This document shows, in pieces, positions 8,991 to 35,642 of a DNA stretch of 64,000 nt (positions within the stretch are counted from its first letter, which is position 1; each line of letters begins with the position of its first letter). The notes beneath the pieces were generated by a model, which did no database searches, was not told where the DNA came from, and saw nothing but the letters and a program-made list of their open reading frames with translations. The stretch covers positions 1 to 64,000 of IMG/VR virus record IMGVR_UViG_3300034104_005687; one strand, 5' to 3'. A program made the translations under genes and the position numbers.

Positions 8991-9320
8991 ATGGCAATAA
9001 CAACCAATTATCCAGACGAATACAAGCAATGGCAGCCTGAACGGGTTGAACTCATTGGAGACCGAGCTGTAAAGTTTCGTGACGTATGTGTACACGAGAT
9101 CCGCATGGGCGACGTAGAAGATCCGGATTTAATGGTTGCTGAACCAATTTGGAGGTGGCAAGAATCAGATGCTGGTAAGTTTATAATGGAGCATGCCAAG
9201 GATAAACCTTACTGGACTCGTAGCATAGATCCGCACACGTATGGACACATGTACCGCATCATAGCAAGATTAAGTGAGCAGGATCAAATCTTTTGGACAT
9301 TAAAGTGGGGTAACAAATGA
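8991..9320 (+). CDS. Hypothetical protein
   Basis: 109-aa ORF; ATGA overlap with the epimerase gene. Confidence 0.75.
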   Translation: MAITTNYPDEYKQWQPERVELIGDRAVKFRDVCVHEIRMGDVEDPDLMVAEPIWRWQESDAGKFIMEHAKDKPYWTRSIDPHTYGHMYRIIARLSEQDQIFWTLKWGNK

Positions 9321-10285
9321 AAATATTAGTAACAGGCGGACTAGGGTTAATTGGTCACAATGTAGTGCAAAGACTAGAAGCCCGAGATCACGAAGTGATC
9401 ATCACAGACACTCGTACCAACTACGGAATTATTCCACAAGCAGAACTTGATTACTTGATGGGCGAGCGGTTAAAGAAGATATCAGGCAACAACATCTATC
9501 ACATTGACATTACCAATGCCGAAGACTTTGACTGGTTGGTAGGCAAACACAAGCCCGAAGTAATCATTCACATGGCAAGTTTTCCCCGACAGAAAGTTGT
9601 CAATGCTAACCCTGCCTGGGGCAGTCGTGTTATGATGGAAGGGTTGATCAACGTTTGTGAGAGTGCCAAAAAGCACAATGTAGAACGTGTTGTGTACATA
9701 TCTAGTTCAATGGTGTATGGTGATTTTGAAGATCAAGTAGAAGAAGACTACGACTGCCGACCCATTGGACAATATGGCATCTTAAAATTAACTGGAGAAG
9801 ACCTTGTCAAAGACTACCATCGTCGCGGTGCTTTCGATTACGCTGTTATTAGGCCTAGTGCTGTATACGGGCCACTGGATGTGGAAGACAGGGTCGTTGC
9901 AAAATTTATGCTCGGAGCCATGCGAGGTAGCGTTCTCCGAGTTAATGGGGCAGGGGAGACGTTAGACTTTACCTATGTAGATGATGCCGCTGATGGTATT
10001 GTAGCAGCCGCTACTCGTATCATGGCTCGTAACAATACCTACAACATTACTAAATCGCATTCAGTTAGTTTGTTAGAAGCCGCAGAGATGATTGTGAAGA
10101 TTGTGGGCAAGGGTGAGATCGAAACTCGAGACAAAGATGCAGACTTTCCCAGTCGCGGTGCACTGAACATTGATCGTGCCAGGACCATACTAGGCTACGA
10201 TCCCAAAGTTGATGTAGAAGAAGGATTCCAAAAGTATTATGACTGGCTTTCGAATTCCGTTTACTGGTCTCCAAAGACAGTATAA
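9317..10285 (+). CDS. NAD-dependent NDP-sugar epimerase/dehydratase (extended SDR)
   Basis: TGGLGLIG Rossmann motif, YISSSMVYG, YGILK (YxxxK), RPSAVYGP, DFTYVDD. Confidence 0.92.
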   Translation: MKILVTGGLGLIGHNVVQRLEARDHEVIITDTRTNYGIIPQAELDYLMGERLKKISGNNIYHIDITNAEDFDWLVGKHKPEVIIHMASFPRQKVVNANPAWGSRVMMEGLINVCESAKKHNVERVVYISSSMVYGDFEDQVEEDYDCRPIGQYGILKLTGEDLVKDYHRRGAFDYAVIRPSAVYGPLDVEDRVVAKFMLGAMRGSVLRVNGAGETLDFTYVDDAADGIVAAATRIMARNNTYNITKSHSVSLLEAAEMIVKIVGKGEIETRDKDADFPSRGALNIDRARTILGYDPKVDVEEGFQKYYDWLSNSVYWSPKTV

Positions 10286-11342
10286 ACAACTCCGCGAGGA
10301 GATTCTAGACGCAACTGATCAGGTACTGCAATCAGGTCAGCTCATGAACGGCGCCTGGACTCAGAAGTTTGAAAACTGGCTGGCTGTTAGGAACGGTGGC
10401 AAAAATGCTGTGACTTGCCACTCGGGCACACAGGCCTTGGAAATTATAGCCGAATATTGGCGTGGACTAGAACTAACCAATAAGTCGCCAAGAGTGTTGA
10501 TCCCTAGCTTGACGTTTGTGGCCACGGCCAATGCGTTCTTGCGAGCTGGTTGGGACGTACACTTTGTAGACGTGGATGTCAACGGGTTGCTTGACCCTGA
10601 TAAAATCCCCCAAGACCTTGATTATCAAGCCATAGTGTTGGTTGGTTTGTATGGCGCTGCTATTTCCCACGCTCATTCTGTAAAGGCCTGGACACATTGG
10701 TTACACAACAATGTCACAGTGATTGAAGATGCTGCACAACATTGGTTAGGCAACAATAGCCAACGAGTCGGCGAAGGCAGCGCCATCAGTTTTGACCCCA
10801 TGAAGAACTTGGCCTGTTATGGCAACGGTGGTGCAGTGGTCACAGACAACCAGGATCTAGCAGACTTTGCACGAGCCTGGCGCAATCACAACAAAGGTGA
10901 CTACAAGGCCGAACGTGGTGGCAGCAACAGTCGCATGAGCGAACTGGATTGTGCACACATGATGGTCAAAACACAGTACATTGATCAATGGCAAGCTCGT
11001 CGTCGCCGGATTGCTGCCTACATGTGTGAACGATTTGCAAATACCAGCATACGCTGTTTGATCAACGAACACAATGAGCACAATCATGCGTTTCACAAGT
11101 TTGTGATTGATGTTGATCAGCGCAATCGACTGCAAGAGAAACTGTGGAACGCCAGTATTGACACACGAATACACTATGAGCAACCCTTGCACGATAACTC
11201 TGTGTTGAGACAATTCCCCGGGCCCAACATGATGAGTGTAGCCACTGCACTGAGCCAGCGTGTGTTGAGTTTGCCTATCTATCCTGAGTTGTCAGACTTA
11301 GATGTGGAATATGTCACTGATCAGGTGTTAAAGAACGTTTGA
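10239..11342 (+). CDS. DegT/DnrJ/EryC1/StrS PLP-dependent sugar aminotransferase
   Basis: HSGTQAL, TFVATANA, IEDAAQH, SFDPMKNL (catalytic Lys), GNGG, LSLPIYP. Confidence 0.93.
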   Translation: MTGFRIPFTGLQRQYKQLREEILDATDQVLQSGQLMNGAWTQKFENWLAVRNGGKNAVTCHSGTQALEIIAEYWRGLELTNKSPRVLIPSLTFVATANAFLRAGWDVHFVDVDVNGLLDPDKIPQDLDYQAIVLVGLYGAAISHAHSVKAWTHWLHNNVTVIEDAAQHWLGNNSQRVGEGSAISFDPMKNLACYGNGGAVVTDNQDLADFARAWRNHNKGDYKAERGGSNSRMSELDCAHMMVKTQYIDQWQARRRRIAAYMCERFANTSIRCLINEHNEHNHAFHKFVIDVDQRNRLQEKLWNASIDTRIHYEQPLHDNSVLRQFPGPNMMSVATALSQRVLSLPIYPELSDLDVEYVTDQVLKNV

Positions 11343-14300
11343 CAAACGCATAGCTTGCGAGCCAATCCCACTCGTAGCTCTTGCGGAGCTCAGTGGGATC
11401 ACCTTTGACCTCTTCATAGTACTCCACAGCATCCTGTGCGCCTTTATGACTCCAATGTCCATTGGCAATGGTGCCGGAGTCTTCTTTTAACCAGACATTG
11501 AGTCTGTATTCATTTTCCACGTTGGGTAAACTTGCACGTAGTTTAAGTGCTTCACGGAAAGCTGTGCGCCAGGCCATCCAAGGCGATTCAGCATAGTTGG
11601 CTGTGCCACTGAGAATAGGTACAACTTCGTGCGCCTGATCTAGCGTAAAGTCCAGGCCAACACCTGTGTTCTCCAACGCCAACTTCTTGTTGTAGGCAAT
11701 CATGGCTTGGTGACCATACACCAATCCATTGACAGGATTGCCAGCATGAAAGATATAGTGCTTGGGCTGTTGCATACGATCTGGCTGCCAGGTCCAATCA
11801 AACTTGGCGTCAACTTCTAACTTGGCAAACACAGCAAAGAACCAAGGTGTGGTACTGGCTCGTGCTGCCGCATGATAAGCTGCCACACGACCTTTTACTC
11901 CTGATACCATATGTACTTTGTTGGTATGTGATGAGTTGGCTAGATACATCTGCATTTGCAAATAATTAGATGCAGAATTGGGTTCGCCATTGCTGATAAA
12001 CACAATGTCCAGTGGCTGATCGCCATGACGTTTACGTTGTGTCTTGTCAATATGTGCATAATCGTACAGTTGCGTTTTAACATCACCTCGAGCTACTTTT
12101 GGCACAATCACTGCACTGGCACCTGTGCTCAACGGCACAATAGTTTTGACTTCTTGACGCCAAAGAGGAACGGTGGGCATTGTGATAGGCACACCATTTG
12201 TGGTGAACAATGCCAAGGGTCCGGCCCAATCTACATTCTTGACTGCATCCACATGCGAATCAGCAGTGTGTTCAATCACAGGCATGGATCTACGTGGTAC
12301 ACTCCGGCGGGATACATAGTTCACACTATACCATTCCAGCAAAGCTTTCTTTTCGGCACGTTCGGCAAAGGTAGGTACATGCATGTAGAATGTGTCCCCA
12401 AACTTTTGTTCATTGCTGGGGAATACATGCAACATTGTACTTTGCCAGATCTCTGGGTGCCATGAAAAGTCAAAGCCAGTGTAATCGCAAATTGAACTGC
12501 ATATCCACACATGCTCGTATTGCCCCACAAGGCTCCGGGCCAAACGTATTAGTGTATCTCTGTAGTTGTCAAAGTAACGTACTTTTTTAACTACATCTGG
12601 AATTTGCCCTGCGTTGCCATCCAGGTGATCAATTTCAAATATAGGTGCAGCTTCTTGCTTGACTTCTGCCCTCATCATGTCCACATACTTGAACTCAGTG
12701 GCACCAGGCATGCGATACTGCGGTCCTCCAGTCTTTTGATGCTGTGTGGCAAATTGATAGATGTAGGCTGGTTCGCCTGGGTCTGGCTGCCAACTGAAGT
12801 CCATATCAGTAGTGTTCACATATTCAGGAATGGTCCAATTGGTCATATTCGTCAACAAGTTAGCAACCGGTCCTGTCATGTACTTGCGCTCAGTGGCACT
12901 GGGCATGTGATATTCTACAGTGGGCATTTTCTCTGCTGGCCACCACTGGTTACCAAACACATAGATGTAGGGTGGTGATCCAGGTTCGGGTCTCCAGGTA
13001 TAATCCCATTCACAGTCTATGACGGTGTGCCAGTGATTATCGTGTTGAGGCAACAACTGTGCAGGGATATCCATGTACTTGAGTTCTGTAGCACCCAGCA
13101 TGTGATATTCTACAGTGGGCATTACTTCTGCTGAATAGTACTGATTACCAAACACATAGTTATAAGGTGGTGATCCTGGATCGGGTTCCCACGACCAATC
13201 AAAGCTCGCAGGATAGTGTTGTGTAAACCGTGTATGATCCCCACGACGTTGTGCTCGCGGATGATCCATGTATTTGATTTGTGTAGCACCTGTTACTGCA
13301 TACTGTAATGCGGGACGTTGTTCAGGCGTGAGCCACTGATTACCAAACACATACGTATAAGGAGGATCTGTGGGATTGGGCCGCCAGGAGTAATCAAACG
13401 ATTCAATGTCATCCAACAATTCCCAAGCAGCCACGTCTTGTGCTAGTGTAGCAACAATATCATCTACATACTTGATTTCAGTGCCGCCGGCATTGTACAC
13501 TACTGTGGGTTCTAGTACAGCCGAGTTCCATTGGTTACCGAACACATAGGTCATTGGTGGATCAAAAGGATTTGGTTCCCACGAATAGTCAAATTCACTG
13601 ACCGCTAGGTTATGTCCGAACAGGCGTGGTTGCGGCAGTCTGCGTGTGCGTCTATCCATGTACTTGACTTCGATGGCGCCCGGAACAACATACTTGACAC
13701 TGGCTTTGAACTCTGGCTGATTCCATTGATTACCGAACACGTAAATATAGGGTGGATCTTTAGGATTAGGAACCCAGGTCCAGTCCCACCTACTATTATC
13801 AACATCCTCGCATAACTCCCAGTTGGCCATGTTGTCACCTAGTTGAGCAACCACATTGTCAACAAATTTTTCCTGTGTTGCACCAGACATTTCGTAAACC
13901 ACAGTGGGCATTTCTATACCTGGCCAATGTTGATTGCCAAACACATAATTGTAAGGCGGTTCTGTATTGTCAGGATGCCAGGAGTAATCAAATCCTTGTA
14001 TAATTTCTAAATTCTTAAACAACTGTTTATTAGGTAATCTGCGATGCAATATTTCTACATACTTGCGTTCTACAGCACCAGGTACTACATAACAAGCACC
14101 GCCATTGGGTTGCCACTGAGTAGCAAATTCATATATGTAAGGGTTGTCTCCTGGATCAGGCCGCCAAGAATAATCCACGCTTAACGGATCAACATAATCT
14201 GGTACTTGCCAGTTGGTCTTGTCCGCAAGTATCCTGGCAGTCATGTCCATGTATTTGCGTTCAGTAGCACCGGTGACGTGATACTCAACTGTGGCCATTT

Positions 14301-15117
14301 TCTCTGCACTCCACCACTGATTACCAAACACGTAAATGTAAGGCGGATCTCCAGGATCTGGTTCCCAGGCCCAATCAAACTCACAAGGATACAAACAACA
14401 AAATTTACTTTTGTCTGGTAGTCGTTGTGTACGAATATTGTGCATGTACTTTTTTACAGTTGCACCGGGCACATGATACTCTACACTAGAACGAGATTCT
14501 GCTGGCCAATGTTGATTGCCAAACACATAAATCATTGGAGGATCAAATGGATTTGGGTGCCAGTTAAACACAGGATCATGTTCATCTACGTTATCATGTG
14601 TCTGCCAGTCTTTGCGATCCGACTGTGTACGAGCAACAAACACATCCATGTATTTGCGTTCTGTTGCTCCGGGCACACGGTATTCTGGGCCACCTACTCT
14701 ATCCCAATCCCATTCTACAGGAAACTCATATATGTACGGAGGATCTGTGGGATTAGGTGCCCATGTATAGTTTATACTAGCAGGATCAATCCATTTGGGT
14801 ATGTGCCAGTAGCTGATATCAGGCAGTCTGTGTACGGTGCGCTCGCTGTGATAATTTGTTTCAGTATATCCAGCTTTGGGAATAAGATAAACACCTGCAT
14901 CAATTTGATATTGATCTAACCATGCATGTCGCTGATGTGCTTGCCATGGTGGTGGCTCATAAAGCCAATCCCAGTCTGAGTAGTCTGCTAAGTAGTTTGC
15001 TATCCAAAAATACCTTGTGCGACTCAGTTGTTGCGCATGCTGAATAGATTCAACTGCTCGTTCATGAGCAAACAAATTGGGCTTGTGTCCCGATGCAAAA
15101 TAAAATACGTCAAACAT
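11314..15117 (-). CDS. 1267-aa protein: 11 tandem ~65-aa Trp/Pro/Tyr repeats plus C-terminal GT-A-like domain
   Basis: Repeat core (F/W)DxSWxPxPxDPPYxYVFGNQ...VxYxxPGATExKY. C-terminus DIVFISNGEP...VKGRVAAYHAAA...NPVNGLVYG...AWRTAFRE aligns by eye with 32501..33424. Confidence 0.8.
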   Translation of the reverse strand: MFDVFYFASGHKPNLFAHERAVESIQHAQQLSRTRYFWIANYLADYSDWDWLYEPPPWQAHQRHAWLDQYQIDAGVYLIPKAGYTETNYHSERTVHRLPDISYWHIPKWIDPASINYTWAPNPTDPPYIYEFPVEWDWDRVGGPEYRVPGATERKYMDVFVARTQSDRKDWQTHDNVDEHDPVFNWHPNPFDPPMIYVFGNQHWPAESRSSVEYHVPGATVKKYMHNIRTQRLPDKSKFCCLYPCEFDWAWEPDPGDPPYIYVFGNQWWSAEKMATVEYHVTGATERKYMDMTARILADKTNWQVPDYVDPLSVDYSWRPDPGDNPYIYEFATQWQPNGGACYVVPGAVERKYVEILHRRLPNKQLFKNLEIIQGFDYSWHPDNTEPPYNYVFGNQHWPGIEMPTVVYEMSGATQEKFVDNVVAQLGDNMANWELCEDVDNSRWDWTWVPNPKDPPYIYVFGNQWNQPEFKASVKYVVPGAIEVKYMDRRTRRLPQPRLFGHNLAVSEFDYSWEPNPFDPPMTYVFGNQWNSAVLEPTVVYNAGGTEIKYVDDIVATLAQDVAAWELLDDIESFDYSWRPNPTDPPYTYVFGNQWLTPEQRPALQYAVTGATQIKYMDHPRAQRRGDHTRFTQHYPASFDWSWEPDPGSPPYNYVFGNQYYSAEVMPTVEYHMLGATELKYMDIPAQLLPQHDNHWHTVIDCEWDYTWRPEPGSPPYIYVFGNQWWPAEKMPTVEYHMPSATERKYMTGPVANLLTNMTNWTIPEYVNTTDMDFSWQPDPGEPAYIYQFATQHQKTGGPQYRMPGATEFKYVDMMRAEVKQEAAPIFEIDHLDGNAGQIPDVVKKVRYFDNYRDTLIRLARSLVGQYEHVWICSSICDYTGFDFSWHPEIWQSTMLHVFPSNEQKFGDTFYMHVPTFAERAEKKALLEWYSVNYVSRRSVPRRSMPVIEHTADSHVDAVKNVDWAGPLALFTTNGVPITMPTVPLWRQEVKTIVPLSTGASAVIVPKVARGDVKTQLYDYAHIDKTQRKRHGDQPLDIVFISNGEPNSASNYLQMQMYLANSSHTNKVHMVSGVKGRVAAYHAAARASTTPWFFAVFAKLEVDAKFDWTWQPDRMQQPKHYIFHAGNPVNGLVYGHQAMIAYNKKLALENTGVGLDFTLDQAHEVVPILSGTANYAESPWMAWRTAFREALKLRASLPNVENEYRLNVWLKEDSGTIANGHWSHKGAQDAVEYYEEVKGDPTELRKSYEWDWLASYAFVKRSLTPDQ
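12670..14830 (-). repeat. Coding tandem repeat array, 11 units of ~65 aa (~195 nt)
   Basis: 11 WxPx(P/N)x(D/E/S)(P/N)(P/A) cores counted in the translation; boundaries approximate. Confidence 0.85.
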
Positions 15118-18432: not shown

Positions 18433-19002
18433 CTTGGTATATTCGCCCAAGGTAATGTAACAACAAATTCGTTGCACTGATTCAGGAACCTCACGTTCCA
18501 TATCGTGCCATAATAATTTTTTAACACCGCCACATGTGTGAGAATTAAACATCAGGTATCCGGTGTTTGTAACACTGGGGAATCGATGCACAACATCACT
18601 GTCTGAATTGGTGTTGAAAAATGTTGTACCTATCGTGGTATCATTGTTGGGCAAAAGGTATATTTGCATAGCCGATGGCAGTGTACCATCACAGTGCATA
18701 CCAGGTCTAAAGCCGGGTTCGTCTATCCACCAGCTCAGACTCCAGTACTTTTCATCTACAAACCTTACTCCACATGCTTGTTCAATTTGTGGACGTAGAG
18801 TTTTGCGTGCATAATCTTCCACATCGAAGAAAAACGGTAGGTCAGGTCCGCAAAACATCTTGCGCTTGCTTCTTCCTATCTCCAATCGTTGATATGACAT
18901 TGTGTTCCAGGAACATGATATTATCTGTGACAAAATATTGCTAGGAAATACCTCTGCAACAGAGTACAAATAGCCACAAGAATCAACTGATTGAATCAAC
19001 AT
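18427..19002 (-). CDS. 2OG-Fe(II) oxygenase-like protein
   Basis: HCD (HxD), MQIYL, GTTF, GYLMFN, distal WH and R. Likely start at the TAATG overlap (19002; ORF track 19011). Confidence 0.65.
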   Translation of the reverse strand: MLIQSVDSCGYLYSVAEVFPSNILSQIISCSWNTMSYQRLEIGRSKRKMFCGPDLPFFFDVEDYARKTLRPQIEQACGVRFVDEKYWSLSWWIDEPGFRPGMHCDGTLPSAMQIYLLPNNDTTIGTTFFNTNSDSDVVHRFPSVTNTGYLMFNSHTCGGVKKLLWHDMEREVPESVQRICCYITLGEYTKL

Positions 19003-20489: not shown

Positions 20490-20587
20490 TTGTAGATAAA
20501 TGGATCTCGTTTGCGGAGCTCTTTGAGCTTTTTACGATAACGAATTTCCAGGGTGATTCGTGCCCATAATCTCTTGATCCAGTTCAT
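20486..20587 (-). CDS. 33-aa basic peptide MNWIKRLWARITLEIRYRKKLKELRKRDPFIYK
   Basis: Translated by hand; ATGA overlaps at both ends fill the gap exactly. Confidence 0.7.
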   Translation of the reverse strand: MNWIKRLWARITLEIRYRKKLKELRKRDPFIYK

Positions 20588-29252: not shown

Positions 29253-30345
29253 TTAGATAATTTAGTAGATTTTGTGGCAGTAGAGCACGTTGCTCACGAT
29301 TGTACTCCACAAGATGTTGCTGATTGTATTTACAGATGTCGCGGCTGGCCTTCCAGAAATCCCCAGAGCCCGAGTAACTTATGGCACGTACTGTATCTAT
29401 TATACGCTCACTCCTGGCTTGTGGACAATCAATTTGGTCGTAGCTTTCGTCTAACAATGTGTGAAATGTTTGAAATCCTGCGTTGCGTAGATCTCGCAAA
29501 TAGCCCTGATTGGCTGCAACCACAAATGGGTGTGCCATCAGAATAGGCTTGTAGATCTTTTCTGTACGAAATGTGTGCGGATAATCAAAAATGGTTTCTG
29601 TTACCAAACTGAACCAGGTGTCTGTGTAGCAACGATGATTCACAATAGCATCGCCCCAGGTGTTGTTGAACAGTTGATGTTTGACAAAGCCTGCGTCAGG
29701 GACTGCGTTTAACTGCGGCACAGCACGATCTATTTCGTATTCAGGCGGCAACAAACGTATAGGTTCTGTTTTGCCTGTGTCCAACGCAGACGTAAATGCC
29801 ATTTCGACTTGACTGCCCAAATTGGTCCACAGTGCATGTGACAACATGCCTTGTGCTCTTAGATGATCCATTAGGTACTTGCGGTGTGGTCGCAATCGTC
29901 CGTTAAGGAACAAAAATTCATAAGGACGATGTTCTTTGTATTCCAAGGCACCTTCAATCTGTGCTGCCTTGTTTTCTGTGTACTCCACTATGTTAGAGAA
30001 GTAGCAATCTGTTTTGCAATAACGCCACCCTGGTTCTAAGTCGCCAGAGGTCAACAAACCAATGCGACCATCGCGCACATGGTCAGCGATACGCAATCGT
30101 CGGAGTTGCAGCAACACAGTTTCAGATCCTTCAGCAGGATTTGAAAACACAATGCTCCCTGGATACTGAGTAGCCCACTCTGTGATTTCTGTCCAGTGCT
30201 GTTTCAACAGCACACGGCCCACAATGTACACAGTGTTGGGATCTAACTCAGCAGGCCATTGCCAGAATTCTTCGTCAGAATAGGGCTTCAACAAGTCATA
30301 GACTTCGGCCCAGGTGTCTACTGCAATCTTATGTGACCCTAGCAT
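29239..30345 (-). CDS. Putative GT10-like glycosyltransferase, TEK-x-(F/Y)KP family (paralog 5; start moved from 30501)
   Basis: WFSLVTETIF...FRTEKIYKPILMAHPF...GFQTFHTLLDESYD; ATG 30345 overlaps the end of rSAM 5. Confidence 0.55.
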   Translation of the reverse strand: MLGSHKIAVDTWAEVYDLLKPYSDEEFWQWPAELDPNTVYIVGRVLLKQHWTEITEWATQYPGSIVFSNPAEGSETVLLQLRRLRIADHVRDGRIGLLTSGDLEPGWRYCKTDCYFSNIVEYTENKAAQIEGALEYKEHRPYEFLFLNGRLRPHRKYLMDHLRAQGMLSHALWTNLGSQVEMAFTSALDTGKTEPIRLLPPEYEIDRAVPQLNAVPDAGFVKHQLFNNTWGDAIVNHRCYTDTWFSLVTETIFDYPHTFRTEKIYKPILMAHPFVVAANQGYLRDLRNAGFQTFHTLLDESYDQIDCPQARSERIIDTVRAISYSGSGDFWKASRDICKYNQQHLVEYNREQRALLPQNLLNYLNERS

Positions 30346-31729
30346 AGTATTCACATTCGTGCCACCAGGTGGCCATTTCAGGAAACATTTTCTTAAAGTC
30401 TGTGCCTCTGCGACGATCGTGCTCTGAGAAAAAACGATGGAAATCTGCTTTGGCCACAGTGTGATCTTGTCCTTGGCCTGTTCGCATCCAGGCAATGTCA
30501 CGTTCTAGACGCTGTACTTCATAGTCCTTGAATCCGTGCAGGGGATTGGCTTCTGTGGTCATGTTGGCCAGCATGAAGTCACGTGACTTTTCTAGTTGTA
30601 CTGCATAACTTTCAGGCAACAGTTGCAGACTCTGCCACGCAGGTTCTCTAAGAACAGGTGTATCGAACCACACACGCTGATAGGTTGTGCTGTGAGTGCG
30701 TCTAAGTTGCAGGATCCATTCCATGTAGTCTTGAAATCCAGTGACACTCAAGTTGTTCATTGTGATAATAAACGTTAGACTGTTGCGAGTGGGCACTTCT
30801 GTCAAGAAACGATTCACATTGCGTACCACTCGATCAGCACTCATACCGTGTCTAATATACTCGGCCTGTGCACCACGTCCTGAGTCCAGGCTCACGTACT
30901 GCATGAAGTGTTCAATGTTGGGTGTGCATAGTTGTTTGGCATAGCCTAGATACTTTTCAAACAATGCATCTTCCACTGAGAAGTTTGATGTTACGTTTAG
31001 ATGCAACTTGGGACTAGGATTTGCCAACACATAATCAAACACTCGATAGGTATTTTTGTCCATCAAGGGCTCGCCGCCAGTCATGCGGAAATGTTCTAGC
31101 TTAGGATACAGTGTGGGCCACCATGACCAAAACGCTTCAACATATGGATTAGCCTCCCGAACTGGGATAGGTTTGCGATTACCGGTAAAGTGAGTAGGAT
31201 CGTTATGGGTAGTACTAGTCGGATATCCTCCCAACCTATCAACTTCATCAGCCCATGAGCTACTAAATTGAGGGCTACAGTAACTACACTTGAGATTACA
31301 AGCGTGATTAAAGTTAACTTCCACGTAACTGGGTACGATATCATCTTCTGTTCCTGTTGAATTACGAATCTGTTCAAAGTCTACTGCGGCCCAGGGCTCT
31401 CCTGACCGATAGTGTCTATCCGACAGTTTGTCGTTGGCTTCCATGTTCCAGCAGTACTGACACTCTGAGGGCTTTTCACCACGCAGCATCATCACACGCT
31501 GAGCCTTTTTGTGATCAGTGTTATGTAGGCCGCCGGGCCGAGCCAGATCAGCTTTGGTGATCTTGTGCAAGGGAGGATGATAACATGAGTTGTTGAGACC
31601 TGTAGGCAAGTGAAAACTCACTTGCTTCCATTTGGCCAAGCACAGTGCAGGACCAAGATCCTGTTTCATTTGTTCAGCTGAGTTTAAGAACCTGCTTTTG
31701 TTGTCTACGGTTTCGTCGCCTTTATTCAT
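30329..31729 (-). CDS. Radical SAM protein with N-terminal Cys/His motifs (rSAM 5; start moved from 31831)
   Basis: CLAKW...SCYH...CQYC; HACNLKCSYC; MTGGEP. ATG 31729 overlaps the upstream gene's end. Confidence 0.92.
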   Translation of the reverse strand: MNKGDETVDNKSRFLNSAEQMKQDLGPALCLAKWKQVSFHLPTGLNNSCYHPPLHKITKADLARPGGLHNTDHKKAQRVMMLRGEKPSECQYCWNMEANDKLSDRHYRSGEPWAAVDFEQIRNSTGTEDDIVPSYVEVNFNHACNLKCSYCSPQFSSSWADEVDRLGGYPTSTTHNDPTHFTGNRKPIPVREANPYVEAFWSWWPTLYPKLEHFRMTGGEPLMDKNTYRVFDYVLANPSPKLHLNVTSNFSVEDALFEKYLGYAKQLCTPNIEHFMQYVSLDSGRGAQAEYIRHGMSADRVVRNVNRFLTEVPTRNSLTFIITMNNLSVTGFQDYMEWILQLRRTHSTTYQRVWFDTPVLREPAWQSLQLLPESYAVQLEKSRDFMLANMTTEANPLHGFKDYEVQRLERDIAWMRTGQGQDHTVAKADFHRFFSEHDRRRGTDFKKMFPEMATWWHECEYYARVT

Positions 31730-32423
31730 TGTAAACTGCTTTCCATACCATATCAAATATATCACTGCGATAAAGATCAAGTTCTTGTGCCATAAAAACA
31801 CAAAAATCATCCTGATCTTGATCAATATCAATCACATGTTCTGCCTGCGAAAAATCCATTGGCCAGTTGTTGTAATAATTTTTGTGCCAAGAAATAATCT
31901 CGTAAGCAGAATTTATTTTATCCAAACACTCTTGAGCTATGGATTCTAATAGGTCCGGCACATCAATATTTTGGTTAATTACTTTTGAATAGTCTGCTTG
32001 TACTTCGCCTAGAATATGTGCAGGCAACTGATCCAGTTGTTCTGTGCAATTGATTTCGGGCCAGGCAGGATCTTTGATGGCCTGATAGTGCAACAATCTT
32101 GAAACGTCGTTTTGAATTTGTAGATCTACAAATCTTTTGTGTCCGTGCAGAATCCACTCTCTTCTTAAACTAGACTGCAAATCAGATTTGATAAAGGTTA
32201 TTGATTGCCCTGGAAAAACTTTGGCAATTTGTTGACTGTTCATGCAGTGTGTTAACGTGTGATCTAACGGATTTGATAGAACAGTGTCTAATAGATATCT
32301 GTGCTGAAATACCTGATCGCGATTTGTGTTGTCGTAACTGATGTTAAATTTGTCCCAGGAGTTTCCTAAAAGACGCTGCAGATATCGGTTGCCGCCAGCA
32401 CCGGGACAAAAAGCAATTATCAT
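31722..32423 (-). CDS. Hypothetical protein; weak sulfotransferase/P-loop-like N-terminus
   Basis: MIIAFCPGAGGNRY start resembles a 5'-phosphosulfate-binding loop. ORF solid, function weak. Confidence 0.6.
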   Translation of the reverse strand: MIIAFCPGAGGNRYLQRLLGNSWDKFNISYDNTNRDQVFQHRYLLDTVLSNPLDHTLTHCMNSQQIAKVFPGQSITFIKSDLQSSLRREWILHGHKRFVDLQIQNDVSRLLHYQAIKDPAWPEINCTEQLDQLPAHILGEVQADYSKVINQNIDVPDLLESIAQECLDKINSAYEIISWHKNYYNNWPMDFSQAEHVIDIDQDQDDFCVFMAQELDLYRSDIFDMVWKAVYNE

Positions 32424-32500
32424 TTGTGACCTTTGAGGTTAAGAGTAAGTATTGGAATATTCATTACGATCCAAAAACGCATCAAGCATTAGACAAAAAA

Positions 32501-33424
32501 TTACCAACCTTCTTGCTTGCGGATTACATCAATTTCTCGAATCATGATGCCTTGATTGTGCCAATTTGATCTATAGTGATGTTTAAAAAATGAACTTTGT
32601 TCAGCCTCTAATATAGCCATTGGCAAATCTAATTGTGTACCAAGTTCAGGTCCCAACTGGTTGGCCAATATACGCGGCTGCGAATCTTTGACTGTGTCCC
32701 ATAATTTTGCTAATGCATCAAAGTCTTGTACTTGAGTATGGTCCCAGTTTGTGAGCATGGTCATGTATGTTCCTTGCCGTGCTCCTGCAATTGCCCATTC
32801 TCCATTTTCGACATCACTGCCTACATTGTGCCAGATTGTGAGATTGTCAAGATTGCGCAGTACCTGAGTTTTGAATTCTTCCACAGTGGGCTTGCGTCCA
32901 CGTTGTAGGCTCATTTTGACGCCTTCGCGAAACCCTGCACGCCAGGCTTGAAAAGGTGATCCATTAGGGTATGTTTTGCTGTAGCAGTCGTGCATGGCCC
33001 AATACGCAGGGTCAAAGCAAAACTCTACTTGTGTTTCTGTTCTACCGTCGGTGGCTTCATGCGTCTGCATGGCCGCAACAAAAGTCTTGGTCCACGAACT
33101 GAGTCCTCCGTTGCCATACATCAGTCCATTGATATGATTACGTGCTCGCCATCTAAACACAGCTTGTTCATAATCAGGTGTAGGAAAATGTAGCGTTTGA
33201 TTAAAAAAGCTTGCATTGGGAAGATTGTCTCCATCAATGAGAATAAATCTTTCAGTGCCAGATGCCAAGGCTGCGGCCTTGTGCGCTGCATCGCTGCCCT
33301 TGACACCGTCTACCCGTTTGGCCCAGGGCACCATGTTCTTGATTTTGACCCAAAATTCTTCGCGTTGAGGTTCATCATAGGTTAGAAAAATGCAGTCTAG
33401 ATCTGCTATGTCAATTTGTTTCAT
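32501..33424 (-). CDS. GT-A fold glycosyltransferase-like protein
   Basis: [29 protein letters not shown] (DxD), [18 protein letters not shown]. Confidence 0.65.
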
Positions 33425-33731
33425 AAGTTTGTTTGCTCCAGCATTGGTGTGGTTGTTGATCAGACACTACTACAGCAACATCACAAGGATGACATGGCGT
33501 TCCTGTTTCGGCATGCTCCAGTCGTGCAGTAGTTTGCCAAGTCAGTTCTACTAGTTTGCCACCGCGCACTCGCACATTGGTGGCGCTGCGGGCAAAAGTG
33601 TCTGCGTCAATTTCTATGTATGTACCTGGCACATCTTCCATGCTGTAGAATAACGGAACACCTTGACTGTCATGATACAGTCGAAAGAACACAGGCACTG
33701 GGTCAGCAAAATTCATTTGATATTCAATCAT
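33411..33731 (-). CDS. Hypothetical protein (start moved from 33764)
   Basis: ATGA overlap with the upstream stop at 33728-33731. Confidence 0.7.
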
Positions 33732-34495
33732 GATCGTTGTGCCCTGTAATGTACTGCTCCCCATTGTGCCACAGTGTTGATACGAACAGGATCCATTTCA
33801 AATGTTAGTTCTTTCATCCAGTCCTCTGTAGTAGTGTTGGCATGATGTCGCTTCATGTGTACAATTTGTGGGTAAGTTGCAAATGGCATGGTCACCTGTT
33901 CTGTGCCTATCACTGCGGCAGCCATGGCATACACAAGATCAGTGCTGGGAACGTCTTCGGGATACTTTAGTAATTTTTTGAACTCTGTCCAGTTTGCAAA
34001 TATCTCCCGTACTAGATCAAAAAACGTCTGGGCAGTTTTGCTTAGACGCCAATAGGTTATGGCATTGTACACATCTGGCAGTTGATTTTGATCAAAGCAA
34101 TGTCGATAATTGCGAGCACCACTGATCTCACCAAGCCAGTTTCTACAACCAGTGCTGATCACAACATCACGATGTCTAAACATAGTCCACCAGTGATCAA
34201 TTGGAGTGGCAATCAGCATGTCTGCTTCCAGTTTGATAGTTTCACGAAACGGGGTTTGACGGAAAACCATCCAATCGTTGGCCCAAGGATTTTCAGTGTT
34301 GATGTCATCAACCACGTGTGTGTAAGCAAACAATGCTGAGTCAGCGGCATAGGGCTCGTTGGTCAGCAAACAGATACGTGCCGCGGGATTGTGTTTCAAC
34401 AGTGTCTTTGCCAACGCCCGAGCACAATCCACATAGTCAGTTTTGCCTACATTCCAAGCAGGAATGATATAGCCTTGTTCTTCAATGGGACGCAA
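33728..34495 (-). CDS. GT-A (GT8-like) nucleotide-diphospho-sugar transferase
   Basis: GYIIPA...YVDCARALA...[13 protein letters not shown]; paralogous to the adjacent gene. Confidence 0.6.
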
Positions 34496-35285
34496 TTATT
34501 TTCTCCAAGTGCTGTTTGCCCATGGCATGAAAGTCTGTACCTTGCCAAGTCACCCATCTTGGGCTGTTGTCTGAATCATTGTAGTTGACCTGGTACATGC
34601 TGTCGTCTAGCTTGACAAGTTCTGTGTCAGGCAGCACACTGAGCAAAGGCCAAGGTATTTCTGTGACCTGACCAGTGTGACCTGACACAATGCCCAAAGC
34701 AATGCTGAGTGCAAAATCGTTGCGATAGGTCAACTTGTCAATACCATACAAGTCTCGATAGTGTTGCCAGTTGTTTCGTATCATTTGCATGCAGTCAAAT
34801 ATGTATTGTGCAGTGTTGCTGCGACGAAACATCATTACCGTGGCCCACCACATGGGCATGCTGTGTTGACCAAAAACATTGAGTCCTGGTATGGGAAGGC
34901 CCGTGGCCATGTTGACAGCAGTTCTGTGACACATAAAGTCTGTGTCACTTTGCAGTACACGGCGCAACTCTGATCCGGCTACAACATAGTCAGCATCCAA
35001 CACCAGAGTCTGGTCCCAGGGGGTCAAAGAGTAAGAGTCAACTCGACCTGCATTGTGCCAAGACACAGTTGCTGCGTAATCCTCAAACCAACGTGTGCCT
35101 CCTGTTTGCGGTGCCACGTTAATGACTCGATCAAACGCTCTATTTCTTTCATGGTCCACACAGTCTGTGACAATGGCAACCGGTATGTCAAGGTGTCGGC
35201 GAATGTTTCTAGCACTCCACTCAGCCATAGCAAGGTAGTTGGTTTGTTCATTGTTGAACGCAAAAATAAGTGCGCCAGTGGTCAT
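34482..35285 (-). CDS. GT-A (GT8-like) nucleotide-diphospho-sugar transferase (start moved from 35342)
   Basis: GALIFA...YLAMAEWSA...TPWDQTLVLDADY (DxD), WWATVMMF, RNDFALSIA; ATGA overlap at 35282-35285. Confidence 0.65.
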   Translation of the reverse strand: MTTGALIFAFNNEQTNYLAMAEWSARNIRRHLDIPVAIVTDCVDHERNRAFDRVINVAPQTGGTRWFEDYAATVSWHNAGRVDSYSLTPWDQTLVLDADYVVAGSELRRVLQSDTDFMCHRTAVNMATGLPIPGLNVFGQHSMPMWWATVMMFRRSNTAQYIFDCMQMIRNNWQHYRDLYGIDKLTYRNDFALSIALGIVSGHTGQVTEIPWPLLSVLPDTELVKLDDSMYQVNYNDSDNSPRWVTWQGTDFHAMGKQHLEKIIASH

Positions 35286-35590
35286 CGTTTTTTGTTGTTT
35301 GCGTCGTGTTCCACTAGCCAAGCATTCATTTGCTCTTGCCAACGTTGTTGTACGGCCATTTCGAGATCTCCAACATTGATCCGGATTGGATTTTCATACA
35401 AGTCAAGAATAACTGCTGATTCTCTGTCAGGACAGACTGATAACATAGTCAGTAGTTCTGGTCCAGCACGCCACATACCACCTGCGTAAGCAAATAACAT
35501 ACGTGCTTCGTATTTTTCTTTTAGTAGTCGACGTGCTGTTTGATGATCAAAACGGGCTCGCGAATGTGCAATCAAGGCTTCAGTATCCAT
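35282..35590 (-). CDS. Hypothetical protein, first gene of the long minus-strand modification operon
   Basis: 102-aa ORF directly downstream of a sigma70-type promoter. Confidence 0.75.
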   Translation of the reverse strand: MDTEALIAHSRARFDHQTARRLLKEKYEARMLFAYAGGMWRAGPELLTMLSVCPDRESAVILDLYENPIRINVGDLEMAVQQRWQEQMNAWLVEHDANNKKR

Positions 35591-35624: not shown

Positions 35625-35642
35625 GGGGCAACAGCCCCTTTT
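35622..35642 (-). terminator. Hairpin AAAGGGGC-(4 nt)-GCCCCTTT ending the structural transcript
   Basis: Perfect 8-bp stem 2 nt after the stop of 35645..36610, followed on the minus strand by ACTTTTCT. Confidence 0.75.

What the first reader, a model, noticed from the sequence alone, without database searches (positions are those of the whole stretch)
9317..35590. About 26-kb phage cluster for building a hypermodified glycan: best candidate for an undescribed system
Seen: 2 NDP-sugar epimerase/dehydratases, a DegT aminotransferase, an amidinotransferase, a carbamoyltransferase, a 2OG oxygenase, an SGNH-like protein, 5 radical SAM enzymes and at least 8 glycosyltransferase-like proteins, mostly translationally coupled and abutting the tail/baseplate module. 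Established: this enzyme mix recalls aminoglycoside pathways (StrS-type aminotransferase and StrB1 amidinotransferase in streptomycin, TobZ in tobramycin, radical SAM BtrN in butirosin), and virion glycosylation is known in some mycobacteriophages and giant viruses. Inference: the phage makes its own activated amino/guanidino/carbamoyl sugars and polymerises them onto virion proteins as a shield or adhesin. Alternatives are DNA hypermodification or remodelling of the host surface.
Basis: partly seen in the sequence, partly recalled or inferred. Interest (0 to 1): 0.85.

Follow-up and report, generated by a model that had tools for sequence, protein, structure and literature searches.

The report
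Jumbo-phage sugar-chain building gene island
A widespread freshwater jumbo phage carries a 26-kb block of about 25 soluble enzymes (five related radical-SAM enzymes, at least six sugar-transferases supported by predicted structure, and enzymes of the types that add amino, guanidino and carbamoyl groups) that very probably builds an unusual decorated sugar chain. What the chain is attached to is still unknown.

Summary
Window 9317-35590 is a compact, mostly overlapping gene block. It encodes 2 SDR sugar epimerase/dehydratases, a DegT aminotransferase, an amidinotransferase, a carbamoyltransferase and 5 paralogous radical-SAM enzymes, all of the uncharacterised NCBIfam family N_Twi_rSAM. It also encodes 4 GT-B and 2 GT8-like glycosyltransferases supported by predicted structure, and 2 further GT-like proteins that are leads only. 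The 2OG-oxygenase and SGNH calls could not be confirmed, and both genes are rare accessories.

The window is the first 64 kb of a 349-kb IMG/VR contig. More than 200 relatives carry the block in the same order. A reduced version sits next to the sheath and baseplate genes of the cultured Ralstonia jumbo phage RsoM2USA, where every gene is annotated hypothetical.

No cluster protein has a membrane segment, so this is not a Wzx/Wzy-type surface-polysaccharide pathway. No base-hydroxymethylating enzyme lies nearby; the adjacent ThyX looks canonical.

In bacteria the same rSAM family sits in operons with carbamoyltransferase, GDSL, SDR and GT genes, which points to sugar substrates.

My best reading is a cytoplasmic pathway that decorates a macromolecule, most likely the Ser/Thr-rich fibre proteins encoded directly upstream. 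DNA glycosylation, host-envelope remodelling and a soluble aminoglycoside-like product remain open. I rate it a new variant of a known kind.

The parts
550..1716 (-). Fifth paralogue of the GT-B family, outside the reported range
   Evidence: BLASTP 1e-30 to 15116-16246 and 3e-15 to 29239-30501.
8991..9320 (+). Conserved 109-aa ORF of unknown function, overlapping the SDR start (ATGA) and following thyX
   Evidence: Present in 61/80 loci. No Pfam hit.
9317..10285 (+). Core SDR NDP-sugar epimerase/dehydratase
   Evidence: PF01370 7e-43. Best PDB relatives are UDP-GlcA 4-epimerase-type 6zl6, UDP-Glc 4-epimerases and UXS. No NCBIfam equivalog cut-off reached.
10239..11342 (+). DegT/StrS-type PLP sugar aminotransferase
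   Evidence: PF01041 6e-67. Best PDB hit is Gln:scyllo-inositol transaminase 7b0d at 6e-46, then the C3-aminotransferases QdtB, DesV and WbpE.
11314..15117 (-). 1267-aa protein with 11 tandem ~65-aa repeats (WxPxPxDPPYIYVFGNQ...) and a C-terminal region related to 32501-33424; putative GT-like scaffold or enzyme
   Evidence: Repeat HMM finds 11 domains at 1e-26 to 1e-33. The C-terminus aligns to 32501 at 2e-7. Copy number is 3-17 among 120 close orthologues.
15116..16246 (+). GT-B fold glycosyltransferase (TEK-motif family)
   Evidence: AF2 model pLDDT 88. Foldseek PDB matches WaaG 1e-4, BshA, TPS and TarM. In BFVD the fold appears in proteins named UGDH and fucosyltransferase. No Pfam or NCBIfam hit.
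16230..17420 (+). GT-B paralogue
   Evidence: BLASTP to 15116 (4e-14) and to 29239 (8e-16).
17404..18432 (+). Amidinotransferase (AGAT/StrB1 type); the most conserved gene of the block
   Evidence: Profile against PDB: AGAT 5e-20, StrB1 2e-13, HsvA, SxtG, with GGxxC and HxD aligned. Median identity among relatives is 84%.
18427..19011 (-). Accessory 194-aa ORF; the 2OG-oxygenase call is unconfirmed
   Evidence: No Pfam or PDB hit. Found in only 3 of 160 loci, one of them the window's own contig.
19002..20489 (-). Carbamoyltransferase (NodU/CmcH/TobZ family)
   Evidence: PF02543 1e-38 and PF16861 5e-46. NodU equivalog cut-off not reached.
20584..21627 (-). Conserved core protein of unknown fold and function
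   Evidence: In 71/80 loci and in the distant clade L165. No hit in Pfam, NCBIfam, PHROGs, PDB or Atlas.
21620..22912 (-). Radical-SAM enzyme with N-terminal twitch domain (N_Twi_rSAM)
   Evidence: NF033640 8e-85. CX3CX2C and auxiliary Cys conserved.
22899..23864 (-). Accessory SDR epimerase/dehydratase, probably acquired from bacteria
   Evidence: PF01370 1e-39. Up to 58% identical to SDRs next to N_Twi_rSAM genes in Bacteroidota contigs. True orthologue in 16/80 loci.
23861..24466 (-). Accessory 201-aa protein with an N-terminal GDS motif; the SGNH call is unconfirmed
   Evidence: No Pfam hit. PDB profile best hit 0.27. In 8/80 loci.
24463..25467 (-). GT-B paralogue (variable among relatives)
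   Evidence: BLASTP 1e-12 to 15116. Orthologues mostly about 31% identical.
25448..26659 (-). N_Twi_rSAM radical-SAM enzyme
   Evidence: NF033640 3e-100.
26656..27915 (-). N_Twi_rSAM radical-SAM enzyme
   Evidence: NF033640 2e-116. 1370 cluster representatives at E<1e-30.
27912..29252 (-). N_Twi_rSAM radical-SAM enzyme
   Evidence: NF033640 2e-82. 35% identical to RsoM2USA ORF349.
29239..30345 (-). GT-B paralogue (start revised from 30501)
   Evidence: The leader carries stop codons in a relative.
30329..31729 (-). N_Twi_rSAM radical-SAM enzyme (start revised from 31831)
   Evidence: NF033640 9e-91, match starting at residue 62 of the long ORF. 35% identical to RsoM2USA ORF349.
31722..32423 (-). 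Accessory ORF of unknown function
   Evidence: In 3/80 loci. No hits.
32501..33424 (-). Conserved putative GT-A-like protein (lead only)
   Evidence: Atlas neighbour cluster auto-named 'Glycosyltransferase 2-like' at 0.99. 39% identical to RsoM2USA ORF350. No Pfam, PDB or hhalign support.
33411..33764 (-). Conserved 117-aa ORF of unknown function
   Evidence: In 71/80 loci. No Pfam hit.
33728..34495 (-). GT8-like (retaining GT-A) glycosyltransferase
   Evidence: AF2 pLDDT 79.5. Foldseek matches glycogenin 2.5e-8, GlyE, LH3, XXYLT1 and Skp1 GalT. Invariant D92, D186 and H249.
34482..35288 (-). GT8-like paralogue with an LDADY (DxD) motif (start revised from 35342)
   Evidence: BLASTP 2e-6 to 33728. 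Aligned in A9/A10. 29% identical to RsoM2USA ORF353.
35282..35590 (-). First gene of the minus-strand operon, conserved 102-aa ORF of unknown function
   Evidence: In 55/80 loci. No Pfam hit.
35596..35641 (-). Terminator-like hairpin (AAAGGGGC-TGTT-GCCCCTTT) followed by TTTACT-17-TATAAT, marking the upstream boundary of the block
   Evidence: Conserved in 47 relatives. 91% of cells paired, with one G-C/C-G compensatory pair.
35645..38408 (-). Two Ser/Thr/Ala/Gly-rich fibre-like proteins directly upstream (35645-36610 with 28% S+T; 36624-38408 with 24% S+T); candidate acceptors by inference only
   Evidence: Composition and sequences. 36624 matches virion structural PHROGs.

Best explanation
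The block is a self-contained, entirely cytoplasmic glycan-biosynthesis island of a roughly 350-kb freshwater jumbo phage.

Shown:
- It encodes sugar-nucleotide tailoring enzymes: an SDR, a DegT aminotransferase, an amidinotransferase and a carbamoyltransferase.
- It encodes five anciently diverged N-terminal-twitch radical-SAM enzymes.
- It encodes at least six soluble glycosyltransferases: four GT-B and two GT8-like.
- All of these are conserved together and in the same order across relatives.

Inferred pathway:
- No nucleotidyltransferase was detected, so the pathway probably starts from host NDP-sugars.
- The SDR and the twitch rSAMs probably create keto or otherwise rearranged positions, BtrN-like.
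- The DegT probably aminates these positions.
- The amidinotransferase probably converts an amine to a guanidino group.
- The carbamoyltransferase probably caps a hydroxyl.
- The GT-B and GT8 enzymes, together with the 32501 and 11314 proteins, probably assemble the units into an oligosaccharide or polysaccharide on a soluble macromolecular acceptor.

Most likely acceptor (inference): virion fibre or tail proteins, first of all the Ser/Thr-rich proteins 35645-36610 and 36624-38408 encoded immediately upstream. This would give a glycan coat on the tail apparatus.

I put about 0.85 on 'glycan-building island'. I put about 0.4 on 'virion proteins are the acceptor', and that is the figure given below.
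For: - Enzyme identities.
- Conservation as a unit: more than 130 and more than 226 related IMG/VR stretches, and a core set present in 55-80 of 80 loci.
- A distant phage clade (L165) keeps the same order. It holds one 43-59% orthologue for each of the five rSAMs, plus 20584, the carbamoyltransferase, 32501, 33728 and 34482.
- A sugar context for the rSAM family: in Bacteroidota contigs L216 and L206 it sits in an operon of rSAM, carbamoyltransferase, GDSL, UbiA, GT4, SDR and UDP-glucose dehydrogenase. Another bacterial copy lies near a GT2, RmlD and a sugar C-methyltransferase.
- GT-B domain fusions to an epimerase, a methyltransferase and UGDH in other phages.
- No membrane segment in any cluster protein.
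- Link to the virion module: the block abuts fibre and baseplate genes. The cultured phage RsoM2USA keeps a mini-module (ORF348-353: two 32501-like genes, one rSAM, two GT8-like genes) separated by a few unannotated genes from an SDR (ORF358), the sheath (ORF359), a giant structural protein (ORF361), the baseplate wedge and gp25.
- The Ser/Thr-rich fibre proteins lie directly upstream.
- The closest solved folds to the GT8-like enzymes are protein-directed glycan extenders: glycogenin, GlyE, LH3, XXYLT1 and Skp1 GalT.
Against: - There is no direct evidence for any acceptor.
- A conserved terminator and a sigma-70-like promoter separate the block from the structural genes. The promoter resembles the one heading the thyX-side, non-structural block. 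The one TATAAATA (T4-late-like) motif in the window lies ahead of fibre gene 36624, not ahead of the block. This does not favour late co-expression with virion genes.
- The plus-strand part (SDR, DegT) is translationally coupled to thyX, a nucleotide-metabolism gene.
- The preference of the GT8 matches for protein-directed enzymes may only reflect what is in the PDB.
- The roles of the five rSAMs are inferred from family context only; no member has a known reaction.
- Two of the 'GT-like' genes (32501, 11314) lack structural or profile support.
Confidence: 0.4

Rival explanations
1. DNA hypermodification. The glycosyltransferases attach a tailored sugar or oligosaccharide to a hydroxymethyl- or hydroxy-pyrimidine in phage DNA, and the other enzymes decorate it, protecting the genome from host nucleases.
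For: - Phage GT-A and GT-B enzymes related to LPS and teichoic-acid enzymes do glycosylate DNA. Such clusters can contain epimerases and can lie near structural genes (10.1101/2023.12.21.572611; PMC13326640).
- Here SDR and DegT are translationally coupled to thyX in one plus-strand block.
- All the enzymes are soluble.
- The minus-strand operon has a sigma-70-like promoter of the same type as the non-structural block.
Against: - The defining precursor enzymes are absent from the 64-kb window. No C5-methyltransferase with a TET/5mYOX partner and no ThyA-homologue hydroxylase or hydroxymethylase appeared in the Pfam scans.
- ThyX carries the canonical RHRxxSxxxxSxRY motif.
- thyX is not next to the module in L165 or RsoM2USA.
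- The only 2OG-like candidate is unconfirmed and rare.
- Eight or more GTs plus ten tailoring enzymes far exceed the mono- to trisaccharide DNA glycans described so far.
- The remaining 285 kb of the contig could not be inspected.
Confidence: 0.2
2. Remodelling of a host envelope glycoconjugate. The soluble phage enzymes act on host lipid-linked or nucleotide-sugar intermediates and alter the infected cell's surface glycan or glycolipid, for example to block superinfection or to stop progeny adsorbing to debris.
For: - The bacterial relatives of the rSAM, carbamoyltransferase, SDR and GDSL genes sit in operons with a UbiA prenyltransferase and a GT4, which is typical of membrane-anchored glycoconjugate synthesis.
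- The accessory SDR is up to 58% identical to those bacterial genes, which suggests uptake from such operons.
Against: - The phage block has no UbiA, phosphoglycosyltransferase, flippase, polymerase, ABC transporter or any other membrane protein.
- The core module is conserved between phages with different host signals: a betaproteobacterial host for RsoM2USA, and contigs binned into Bacteroidota and Legionellales MAGs. That is unexpected for a host-specific surface structure.
Confidence: 0.12
3. A soluble aminoglycoside-like or oligosaccharide secondary metabolite made by the phage and released into the cell or at lysis.
For: - The enzyme set parallels aminocyclitol pathways. The DegT's best solved relative is a Gln:scyllo-inositol transaminase. 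The amidinotransferase matches StrB1. There is a TobZ/NodU-type carbamoyltransferase and there are twitch-domain rSAMs as in BtrN.
- All enzymes are soluble and no carrier lipid machinery is present.
Against: - No cyclitol-forming enzyme (DOI synthase or inositol-phosphate synthase), no exporter and no self-resistance gene was found.
- Eight to ten GTs are far more than aminoglycoside pathways use.
- The tight, conserved linkage to the tail module is not explained.
Confidence: 0.08

Closest known systems
Ralstonia jumbo phage RsoM2USA, ORF348-353 with ORF358 (MG752970)
   Same: It has a syntenic mini-module: two 32501-like genes, one N-twitch rSAM (35% identity), two GT8-like genes and an SDR. 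The module lies beside the sheath, giant structural protein, baseplate wedge and gp25 genes.
   Different: It has only one rSAM. No amidinotransferase, carbamoyltransferase, DegT or GT-B family was found in the 49-kb region compared. All its genes are annotated hypothetical and are not discussed in the phage's description (PMC8504454).
Giant-virus glycan gene clusters (Mimivirus fibril glycosylation cluster, chlorovirus capsid glycans); from my own knowledge
   Same: These viruses encode sugar-nucleotide tailoring (dehydratase, aminotransferase) plus several soluble GTs, and build an unusual glycan on virion proteins in the cytoplasm independently of host machinery. The GT-B model also matches Mimiviridae GTs and Mimivirus L138 weakly.
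   Different: They are eukaryotic viruses. No radical-SAM, amidinotransferase or carbamoyltransferase set is known there. There is no detectable orthology beyond the fold.
Mycobacteriophage virion glycosylation (Freeman et al. 2023, PMC10527164, cited in PMC12619734)
   Same: Phage-encoded GTs lie next to structural genes and O-glycosylate capsid and tail-tube proteins.
   Different: Those systems have one or two GTs and no sugar-tailoring or rSAM genes. Here there are about 25 genes, and the target is unproven.
Phage DNA-glycosylation gene clusters (Pyle et al., 10.1101/2023.12.21.572611; Lee et al., PMC13326640)
   Same: They consist of soluble phage GT-A and GT-B enzymes with partner epimerases, sometimes near structural genes.
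   Different: They are defined by a C5-MT with a 5mYOX, or by a ThyA-homologue. Neither was found here. Their glycans have at most about three sugars.
Aminoglycoside pathways (streptomycin StsC/StrB1, butirosin BtrS/BtrN, tobramycin TobZ)
   Same: They use the same enzyme families: a DegT/StsC-type aminotransferase, an amidinotransferase, a twitch rSAM and an O-carbamoyltransferase.
   Different: Here there is no cyclitol synthase, kinase or phosphatase, exporter or resistance gene, and there are many more GTs. The rSAMs belong to a different subfamily, with the twitch domain at the N-terminus.
Bacteroidota operon of N_Twi_rSAM, carbamoyltransferase, GDSL, UbiA, GT4, SDR and UDP-glucose dehydrogenase (L206, L216)
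   Same: It shares the rSAM family, the carbamoyltransferase, the 22899-type SDR (up to 58% identity) and a GDS(L) protein.
   Different: The bacterial operon has one to three rSAMs and membrane-anchoring enzymes (UbiA). The phage has five rSAMs, different GT families and no membrane component. The bacterial operon's function is also unknown.

Membership tests
N_Twi_rSAM (NCBIfam NF033640, twitch-domain radical SAM) | Whole-protein score above the curated cut-off (170 bits) | tested here: met
   All five genes score 277-389 bits.
N_Twi_rSAM (NCBIfam NF033640, twitch-domain radical SAM) | CX3CX2C SAM-cluster motif, and N-terminal Cys ligands of an auxiliary cluster placed before the rSAM core | tested here: met
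   C139, C143 and C146 and C50, C92 and C95 are invariant in 18 sequences. The Pfam SPASM hit lies N-terminal to the Radical_SAM hit.
N_Twi_rSAM (NCBIfam NF033640, twitch-domain radical SAM) | Known reaction or substrate | not testable with these tools
   No paper on an N-terminal-twitch rSAM was found. Only genomic context is available.
GT-B fold glycosyltransferases (550, 15116, 16230, 24463, 29239) | Two-Rossmann-domain GT-B fold | tested here: met
   The model (pLDDT 88) matches only GT-B enzymes: WaaG at 1e-4 with probability 1.0, then BshA, TPS and TarM. Global TM is only about 0.33.
GT-B fold glycosyltransferases (550, 15116, 16230, 24463, 29239) | Sequence membership of a described GT family (for example GT10 or GT4) | tested here: not met
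   No Pfam, NCBIfam, PHROG or PDB-profile hit. GT10 is only an Atlas lead at 0.80.
GT8 (glycogenin/LgtC-type retaining GT-A) for 33728 and 34482 | GT-A fold closest to GT8 structures | tested here: met
   Foldseek matches glycogenin at 2.5e-8 with TM about 0.53, and 328 hits have E<=1e-3.
GT8 (glycogenin/LgtC-type retaining GT-A) for 33728 and 34482 | DxD motif and a downstream His for Mn2+ binding | tested here: inconclusive
   34482 has LDADY and 33728 has LEADM. D92, D186 and H249 are invariant. Metal ligation was not modelled.
GT8 (glycogenin/LgtC-type retaining GT-A) for 33728 and 34482 | Pfam PF01501 match | tested here: not met
   No Pfam hit. Only phrog_1903, of unknown function.
Amidinotransferase (AGAT/StrB1, guanidino-group-modifying superfamily) for 17404 | Profile similarity over the whole fold, with the catalytic Cys-His-Asp | tested here: met
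   AGAT 5e-20 and StrB1 2e-13. GGISC aligns to GGFHC (catalytic Cys) and GHGDA aligns to MHIDA.
Amidinotransferase (AGAT/StrB1, guanidino-group-modifying superfamily) for 17404 | Curated family model hit (Pfam or NCBIfam) | tested here: not met
   No Pfam or NCBIfam hit for the single sequence.
Carbamoyltransferase (NodU/CmcH/TobZ) for 19002 | Both Pfam domains above threshold | tested here: met
   134 and 157 bits. The N-domain match is partial (profile positions 111-345).
Aminoglycoside/aminocyclitol biosynthetic cluster | Cyclitol-forming enzyme plus export or resistance genes | tested here: not met
   No such family in any ORF of 9317-35590.
Phage DNA glycosylation cluster | An adjacent enzyme that makes the acceptor base (C5-MT with 5mYOX/TET, or a ThyA-homologue) | tested here: not met
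   None in the window. ThyX looks canonical.
Wzx/Wzy- or ABC-dependent surface polysaccharide cluster | Initiating phosphoglycosyltransferase, flippase or transporter, and polymerase (membrane proteins) | tested here: not met
   No hydrophobic segment (Kyte-Doolittle, 19-residue window, >=1.6) in any cluster protein, apart from an over-extended ORF leader.
Virion protein glycosylation system | GT genes linked to structural genes | tested here: met
Virion protein glycosylation system | Glycan present on virion proteins | not testable with these tools
   This needs glycoproteomics or glycan staining.
2OG-Fe(II) oxygenase (18427) and SGNH hydrolase (23861) | Family profile or fold match | tested here: not met
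   No Pfam hit even at E<=10. PDB best hits are 0.68 and 0.27.

The most novel reading that the evidence does not exclude
The island makes a free, soluble guanidino- and carbamoyl-decorated oligosaccharide. This would be an aminoglycoside-like secondary metabolite encoded by a phage and tailored by five radical-SAM enzymes. It could be used during infection or released at lysis, for example to act on host or competitor ribosomes or on rival phages.
Probability: 0.08. Interest if true: 0.9.

Novelty: new variant of a known kind. Interest (0 to 1): 0.65.

Why it matters
Virus-encoded glycan synthesis is established for giant viruses, a few mycobacteriophages and DNA-glycosylating phages. No described phage system that I found combines about ten glycosyltransferase-like genes with amino, guanidino and carbamoyl tailoring and five conserved radical-SAM enzymes.

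The lineage is abundant in public metagenomes. Individual cluster proteins have thousands of relatives in the 90%-identity protein clusters.

The rSAM family involved is very large, with about 6,000 50%-identity clusters at E<1e-10, and I found no known reaction for it. The phage island and the recurring bacterial operon together give a tractable entry to its chemistry.

A cultured relative, RsoM2USA, carries the minimal module. The acceptor question (virion, DNA or host envelope) is therefore directly testable.

Tried and rejected
- Megablast of 23.7 kb against 50,697 isolate phage genomes gave no match.
- tblastn of the GT-B protein 15116 against isolate phages gave no match.
- Pfam, NCBIfam and PHROGs on the unknown ORFs gave mostly nothing.
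- PDB profile searches for the GT-B family, 20584 and 32501 gave nothing significant.
- hhalign of 32501 against the GT8-like family, and of 20584 against the GT-B family, showed no relation.
- ESM Atlas for 20584 gave a best score of only 0.54, which is no lead.
- The search for homologous proteins for 33728 and 11314 returned only close, unnamed relatives.
- Two context look-ups with approximate gene coordinates failed.
- The isolate Agaribacillus aureus carries a lone rSAM in an uninformative context.
- Stop-codon recoding in relatives was considered, after in-frame stops appeared in tblastn hits. I rejected it: the stops lie in over-extended 5' leaders and at gene boundaries, and involve all three stop codons.
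- 'Moraphages' (PMC12619734) and a 2026 huge-phage envelope preprint were checked. The passages searched mention neither radical SAM nor a cluster like this one.
- Literature searches for N-terminal-twitch rSAMs, and for jumbo-phage clusters combining rSAM, GT and carbamoyltransferase, found nothing relevant.
I rebuilt it without those rows.

Full report
**Origin and setting.** The window is the first 64 kb of IMG/VR contig IMGVR_UViG_3300034104_005687 (349,369 bp); loci L056 and L081 match it at 100% identity. It has no nucleotide match among 50,697 isolate phage genomes. Protein searches recovered 132 (GT-B gene) and 226 (rSAM gene) related stretches in IMG/VR, on contigs of up to about 350 kb. 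Two contigs of the same phage group are binned in a Haliscomenobacter MAG (L163, L164). Downstream of the finding lie a fibre-like protein (36624-38408), a 4900-aa ORF (39206-53908), a baseplate wedge protein (53908-57648; phrog_10646, 6e-282), gp25 (57685-58059) and a VgrG-like protein. Upstream lie a MoxR ATPase, a VWA/DUF2201 protein, a chain of small ORFs and a ThyX with the canonical RHRxxSxxxxSxRY motif.

**Checking the observation.**
- Pfam and NCBIfam confirm two SDR epimerase/dehydratases, the DegT aminotransferase, the carbamoyltransferase and five radical-SAM enzymes.
- All five rSAMs exceed the curated cut-off of one NCBIfam family, NF033640. In this family a twitch (half-SPASM) auxiliary-cluster domain precedes the rSAM core. 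The CX3CX2C motif and the auxiliary cysteines are invariant.
- The amidinotransferase (17404-18432) is invisible to Pfam. A profile of ten orthologues hits arginine:glycine amidinotransferase (5e-20), StrB1 (2e-13), HsvA and SxtG, with the catalytic Cys, His and Asp aligned.
- Five paralogues share a C-terminal TEKTFKPI...PFV...GF.TF motif (550, 15116, 16230, 24463, 29239). They gave an AlphaFold2 model with pLDDT 88 whose PDB matches are exclusively GT-B glycosyltransferases (WaaG, BshA, trehalose-6-P synthase, TarM). In viral and Atlas structure libraries the same fold is found in longer proteins that also carry UDP-glucose dehydrogenase, epimerase or methyltransferase annotations.
- The paralogous pair 33728/34482 gave a model with pLDDT 79.5 that matches glycogenin-type GT8 enzymes (2.5e-8). 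A DxD-like motif and a downstream His are invariant.
- 32501 and the C-terminus of the 1267-aa protein are related to each other. They are GT-like only by an Atlas neighbour name, and every profile test failed.
- The '2OG oxygenase' (18427) and 'SGNH' (23861) calls could not be confirmed.
- Neighbouring genes mostly overlap by 4-20 nt.
- Three GTG/TTG ORF starts are over-extended.

**Core and accessory genes.** tblastn of every window protein against 160 related loci gave the following.
- Conserved core: thyX, 8991, SDR 9317, DegT, 11314, GT-B 15116 and 16230, the amidinotransferase (median 84% identity, the highest), the carbamoyltransferase, 20584, all five rSAMs (80/80 loci), 32501, 33411, 33728, 34482 and 35282.
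- Sporadic: 18427, SDR 22899, 23861 and 31722.
- A distant clade (L165, binned as Legionellales) keeps the same order. Each of the five rSAMs has its own 43-59% orthologue there, and L165 also holds a further rSAM copy. The five are therefore old, functionally distinct paralogues.
- The only cultured relative found is Ralstonia jumbo phage RsoM2USA. ORF348-353 hold two 32501-like genes, one rSAM and two GT8-like genes, and ORF358 is an SDR. These lie beside the sheath (ORF359), the giant structural protein (ORF361, detected in virions), the baseplate wedge and gp25. All are annotated hypothetical.

**What the rSAM family's relatives say.** The family is huge: 1370 50%-identity cluster representatives at E<1e-30. 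In bacterial genomes and MAGs it occurs mostly in Bacteroidota, Bdellovibrionota and Elusimicrobiota, often in arrays of up to 8 copies per 21 kb. In two Bacteroidota contigs, one of them a complete chromosome, it lies in a recurring operon. That operon holds the rSAM, a carbamoyltransferase, a GDSL protein, a UbiA prenyltransferase, a GT4, an SDR and a UDP-glucose dehydrogenase, and one contig adds a sulfotransferase. Another bacterial copy lies near a GT2, RmlD and a sugar C-methyltransferase fusion. The phage's accessory SDR 22899 is up to 58% identical to these bacterial SDRs. This context ties the rSAMs to glycoconjugate tailoring. I found no paper that describes the family.

**Mechanism.**

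Shown:
- The enzymes are all soluble.
- The families are those listed above, and they are conserved as a unit.

Inferred:
- Host NDP-sugars are oxidised or rearranged by the SDR and by twitch-type rSAMs. The precedent is the twitch enzyme BtrN, which oxidises a hydroxyl to the ketone that a DegT-type enzyme then aminates.
- The DegT's closest solved relatives are a glutamine:scyllo-inositol transaminase and C3-aminotransferases.
- The amidinotransferase would turn an amine into a guanidino group, and the carbamoyltransferase would cap a hydroxyl.
- Four or five GT-B enzymes, two GT8-like enzymes and the 32501/11314 proteins would assemble a multi-sugar chain.

**The acceptor.** This is the open question.
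- A Wzx/Wzy- or ABC-type surface pathway is rejected, because no membrane protein is present.
- A DNA target lacks its defining precursor enzymes in this window. thyX adjacency is not conserved in L165 or RsoM2USA.
- An aminoglycoside-like product lacks a cyclitol synthase, export and resistance genes, and would not need about ten GTs.
- A virion target fits several observations. The module is linked to the tail genes in two very distant phages. Two Ser/Thr/Ala/Gly-rich fibre-like proteins lie directly upstream (28% and 24% S+T). The nearest solved folds to the GT8-like enzymes are protein-directed.
- It is weakened by the transcription signals. A terminator-like hairpin followed by TTTACT-17-TATAAT separates the block from the fibre genes. 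It is conserved in 47 relatives, with 91% of cells paired and one compensatory G-C/C-G pair. The same architecture heads the non-structural plus-strand block at about 1775-1830. The window's single TATAAATA motif lies ahead of fibre gene 36624.
- I therefore give about 0.85 to 'glycan-building island', 0.4 to a virion-protein acceptor, 0.2 to DNA, 0.12 to the host envelope and 0.08 to a soluble metabolite. The remainder is unassigned.

**Comparison and novelty.** The system works like giant-virus glycan clusters and mycobacteriophage virion glycosylation, and it shares enzyme families with streptomycin, butirosin and tobramycin pathways. It fails the defining tests for an aminoglycoside cluster, a DNA-glycosylation cluster and a surface-polysaccharide cluster (see the membership rows). 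The combination of five conserved N-twitch rSAMs, guanidino and carbamoyl tailoring, and two phage-specific GT families has no description that I could find. I rate it a new variant of a known kind, virus-encoded glycan biosynthesis. It has a real chance of revealing new rSAM sugar chemistry.

**Limits.**
- Only 64 kb of the 349-kb genome was visible.
- Two structure predictions were available.
- Functions of 20584, 33411, 35282, 8991, 31722 and the 11314 repeats remain unknown.
- Promoter and terminator calls are pattern-level evidence only.

Noticed in passing
window 11314-15117 (-): The 1267-aa protein has 11 tandem ~65-aa repeats (FDxSWxPxPxDPPYIYVFGNQW...GATExKYMD). Among 120 close orthologues, whose C-terminal region is 74-100% identical to the window's, the copy number runs from 3 to 17 and protein length from 710 to 1648 aa in steps of about 65 aa. 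This suggests a ruler, spacer or binding array under rapid length variation.
   Followed up: partly
window 35596-35641 (-); also window ~1775-1830 (+): A conserved terminator-like hairpin is followed by a sigma-70-like promoter (TTTACT-17-TATAAT; TGn-extended -10 in most relatives) between fibre gene 35645 and the first cluster gene. It is present in 47 relatives with one compensatory stem pair. Eight relatives carry a different hairpin at the same place. The same hairpin-plus-promoter architecture (TTGACT-17-TATAAT) heads the plus-strand block.
   Followed up: yes
window 550-1716 (-): A fifth paralogue of the GT-B family lies 8 kb outside the reported range, on the far side of the MoxR/VWA/thyX block.
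   Followed up: partly
window 15115-15118: The divergent genes 11314-15117 (-) and 15116-16246 (+) have start codons that overlap by two bases (CATG), leaving no intergenic promoter space. Convergent 3' overlaps occur at 11314-11342 and 18427-18432.
   Followed up: no
L163, L164 (NZ_JBBAKG010000001.1 and NZ_JBBAKG010000003.1): Two contigs of 183 kb and 148 kb binned as a Haliscomenobacter sp. MAG carry this phage cluster at 79-84% identity. They are probably phage contigs in a bacterial bin and hint at a Saprospiraceae (Bacteroidota) host.
   Followed up: no
L206 9941-20074; L216 1017-16004: A recurring Bacteroidota operon holds an N_Twi_rSAM, a carbamoyltransferase, a GDSL protein, a UbiA prenyltransferase, a GT4, an SDR, an unknown gene and a UDP-glucose dehydrogenase; L216 adds a sulfotransferase and two more rSAMs. 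I found no characterisation of it.
   Followed up: partly
L172 (Bacteriovoracaceae UBA6144), L187, L165: Arrays of 6-8 N_Twi_rSAM paralogues lie within about 21 kb of bacterial or MAG contigs. One Elusimicrobia bin has many contigs that each carry copies.
   Followed up: no
window 39206-53908 (-): A single 4900-aa ORF lies between the fibre genes and the baseplate wedge. It has patchy similarity to RsoM2USA ORF361 (2541 aa), which was detected in virions by mass spectrometry.
   Followed up: no
window 35645-36610 and 36624-38408 (-): Both proteins start with MAY(S/T). They are extremely rich in Thr, Ser, Ala and Gly (28% and 24% S+T), are fibre-like, and lie directly upstream of the glycan block.
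   Followed up: partly
window 29239-30501, 30329-31831, 34482-35342 (-): The longest-ORF starts (GTG/TTG) are over-extended, because relatives have stop codons in the corresponding leaders. The apparent membrane helix at the N-terminus of 30329-31831 is an artefact of this.
   Followed up: yes
window 6033-7256 (+): A chain of six small overlapping ORFs (42-79 aa) fills the apparent gap between the VWA gene and 7249. One of them (6579-6755) looks hydrophobic. No tRNA genes occur anywhere in the 64 kb.
   Followed up: no
window 2068-3150 and 4743-6023 (+): A MoxR-type AAA ATPase and a DUF2201 metallopeptidase/VWA protein form a pair upstream of the thyX block. The orthologues detected in related loci are 73-79% identical at the median.
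   Followed up: no
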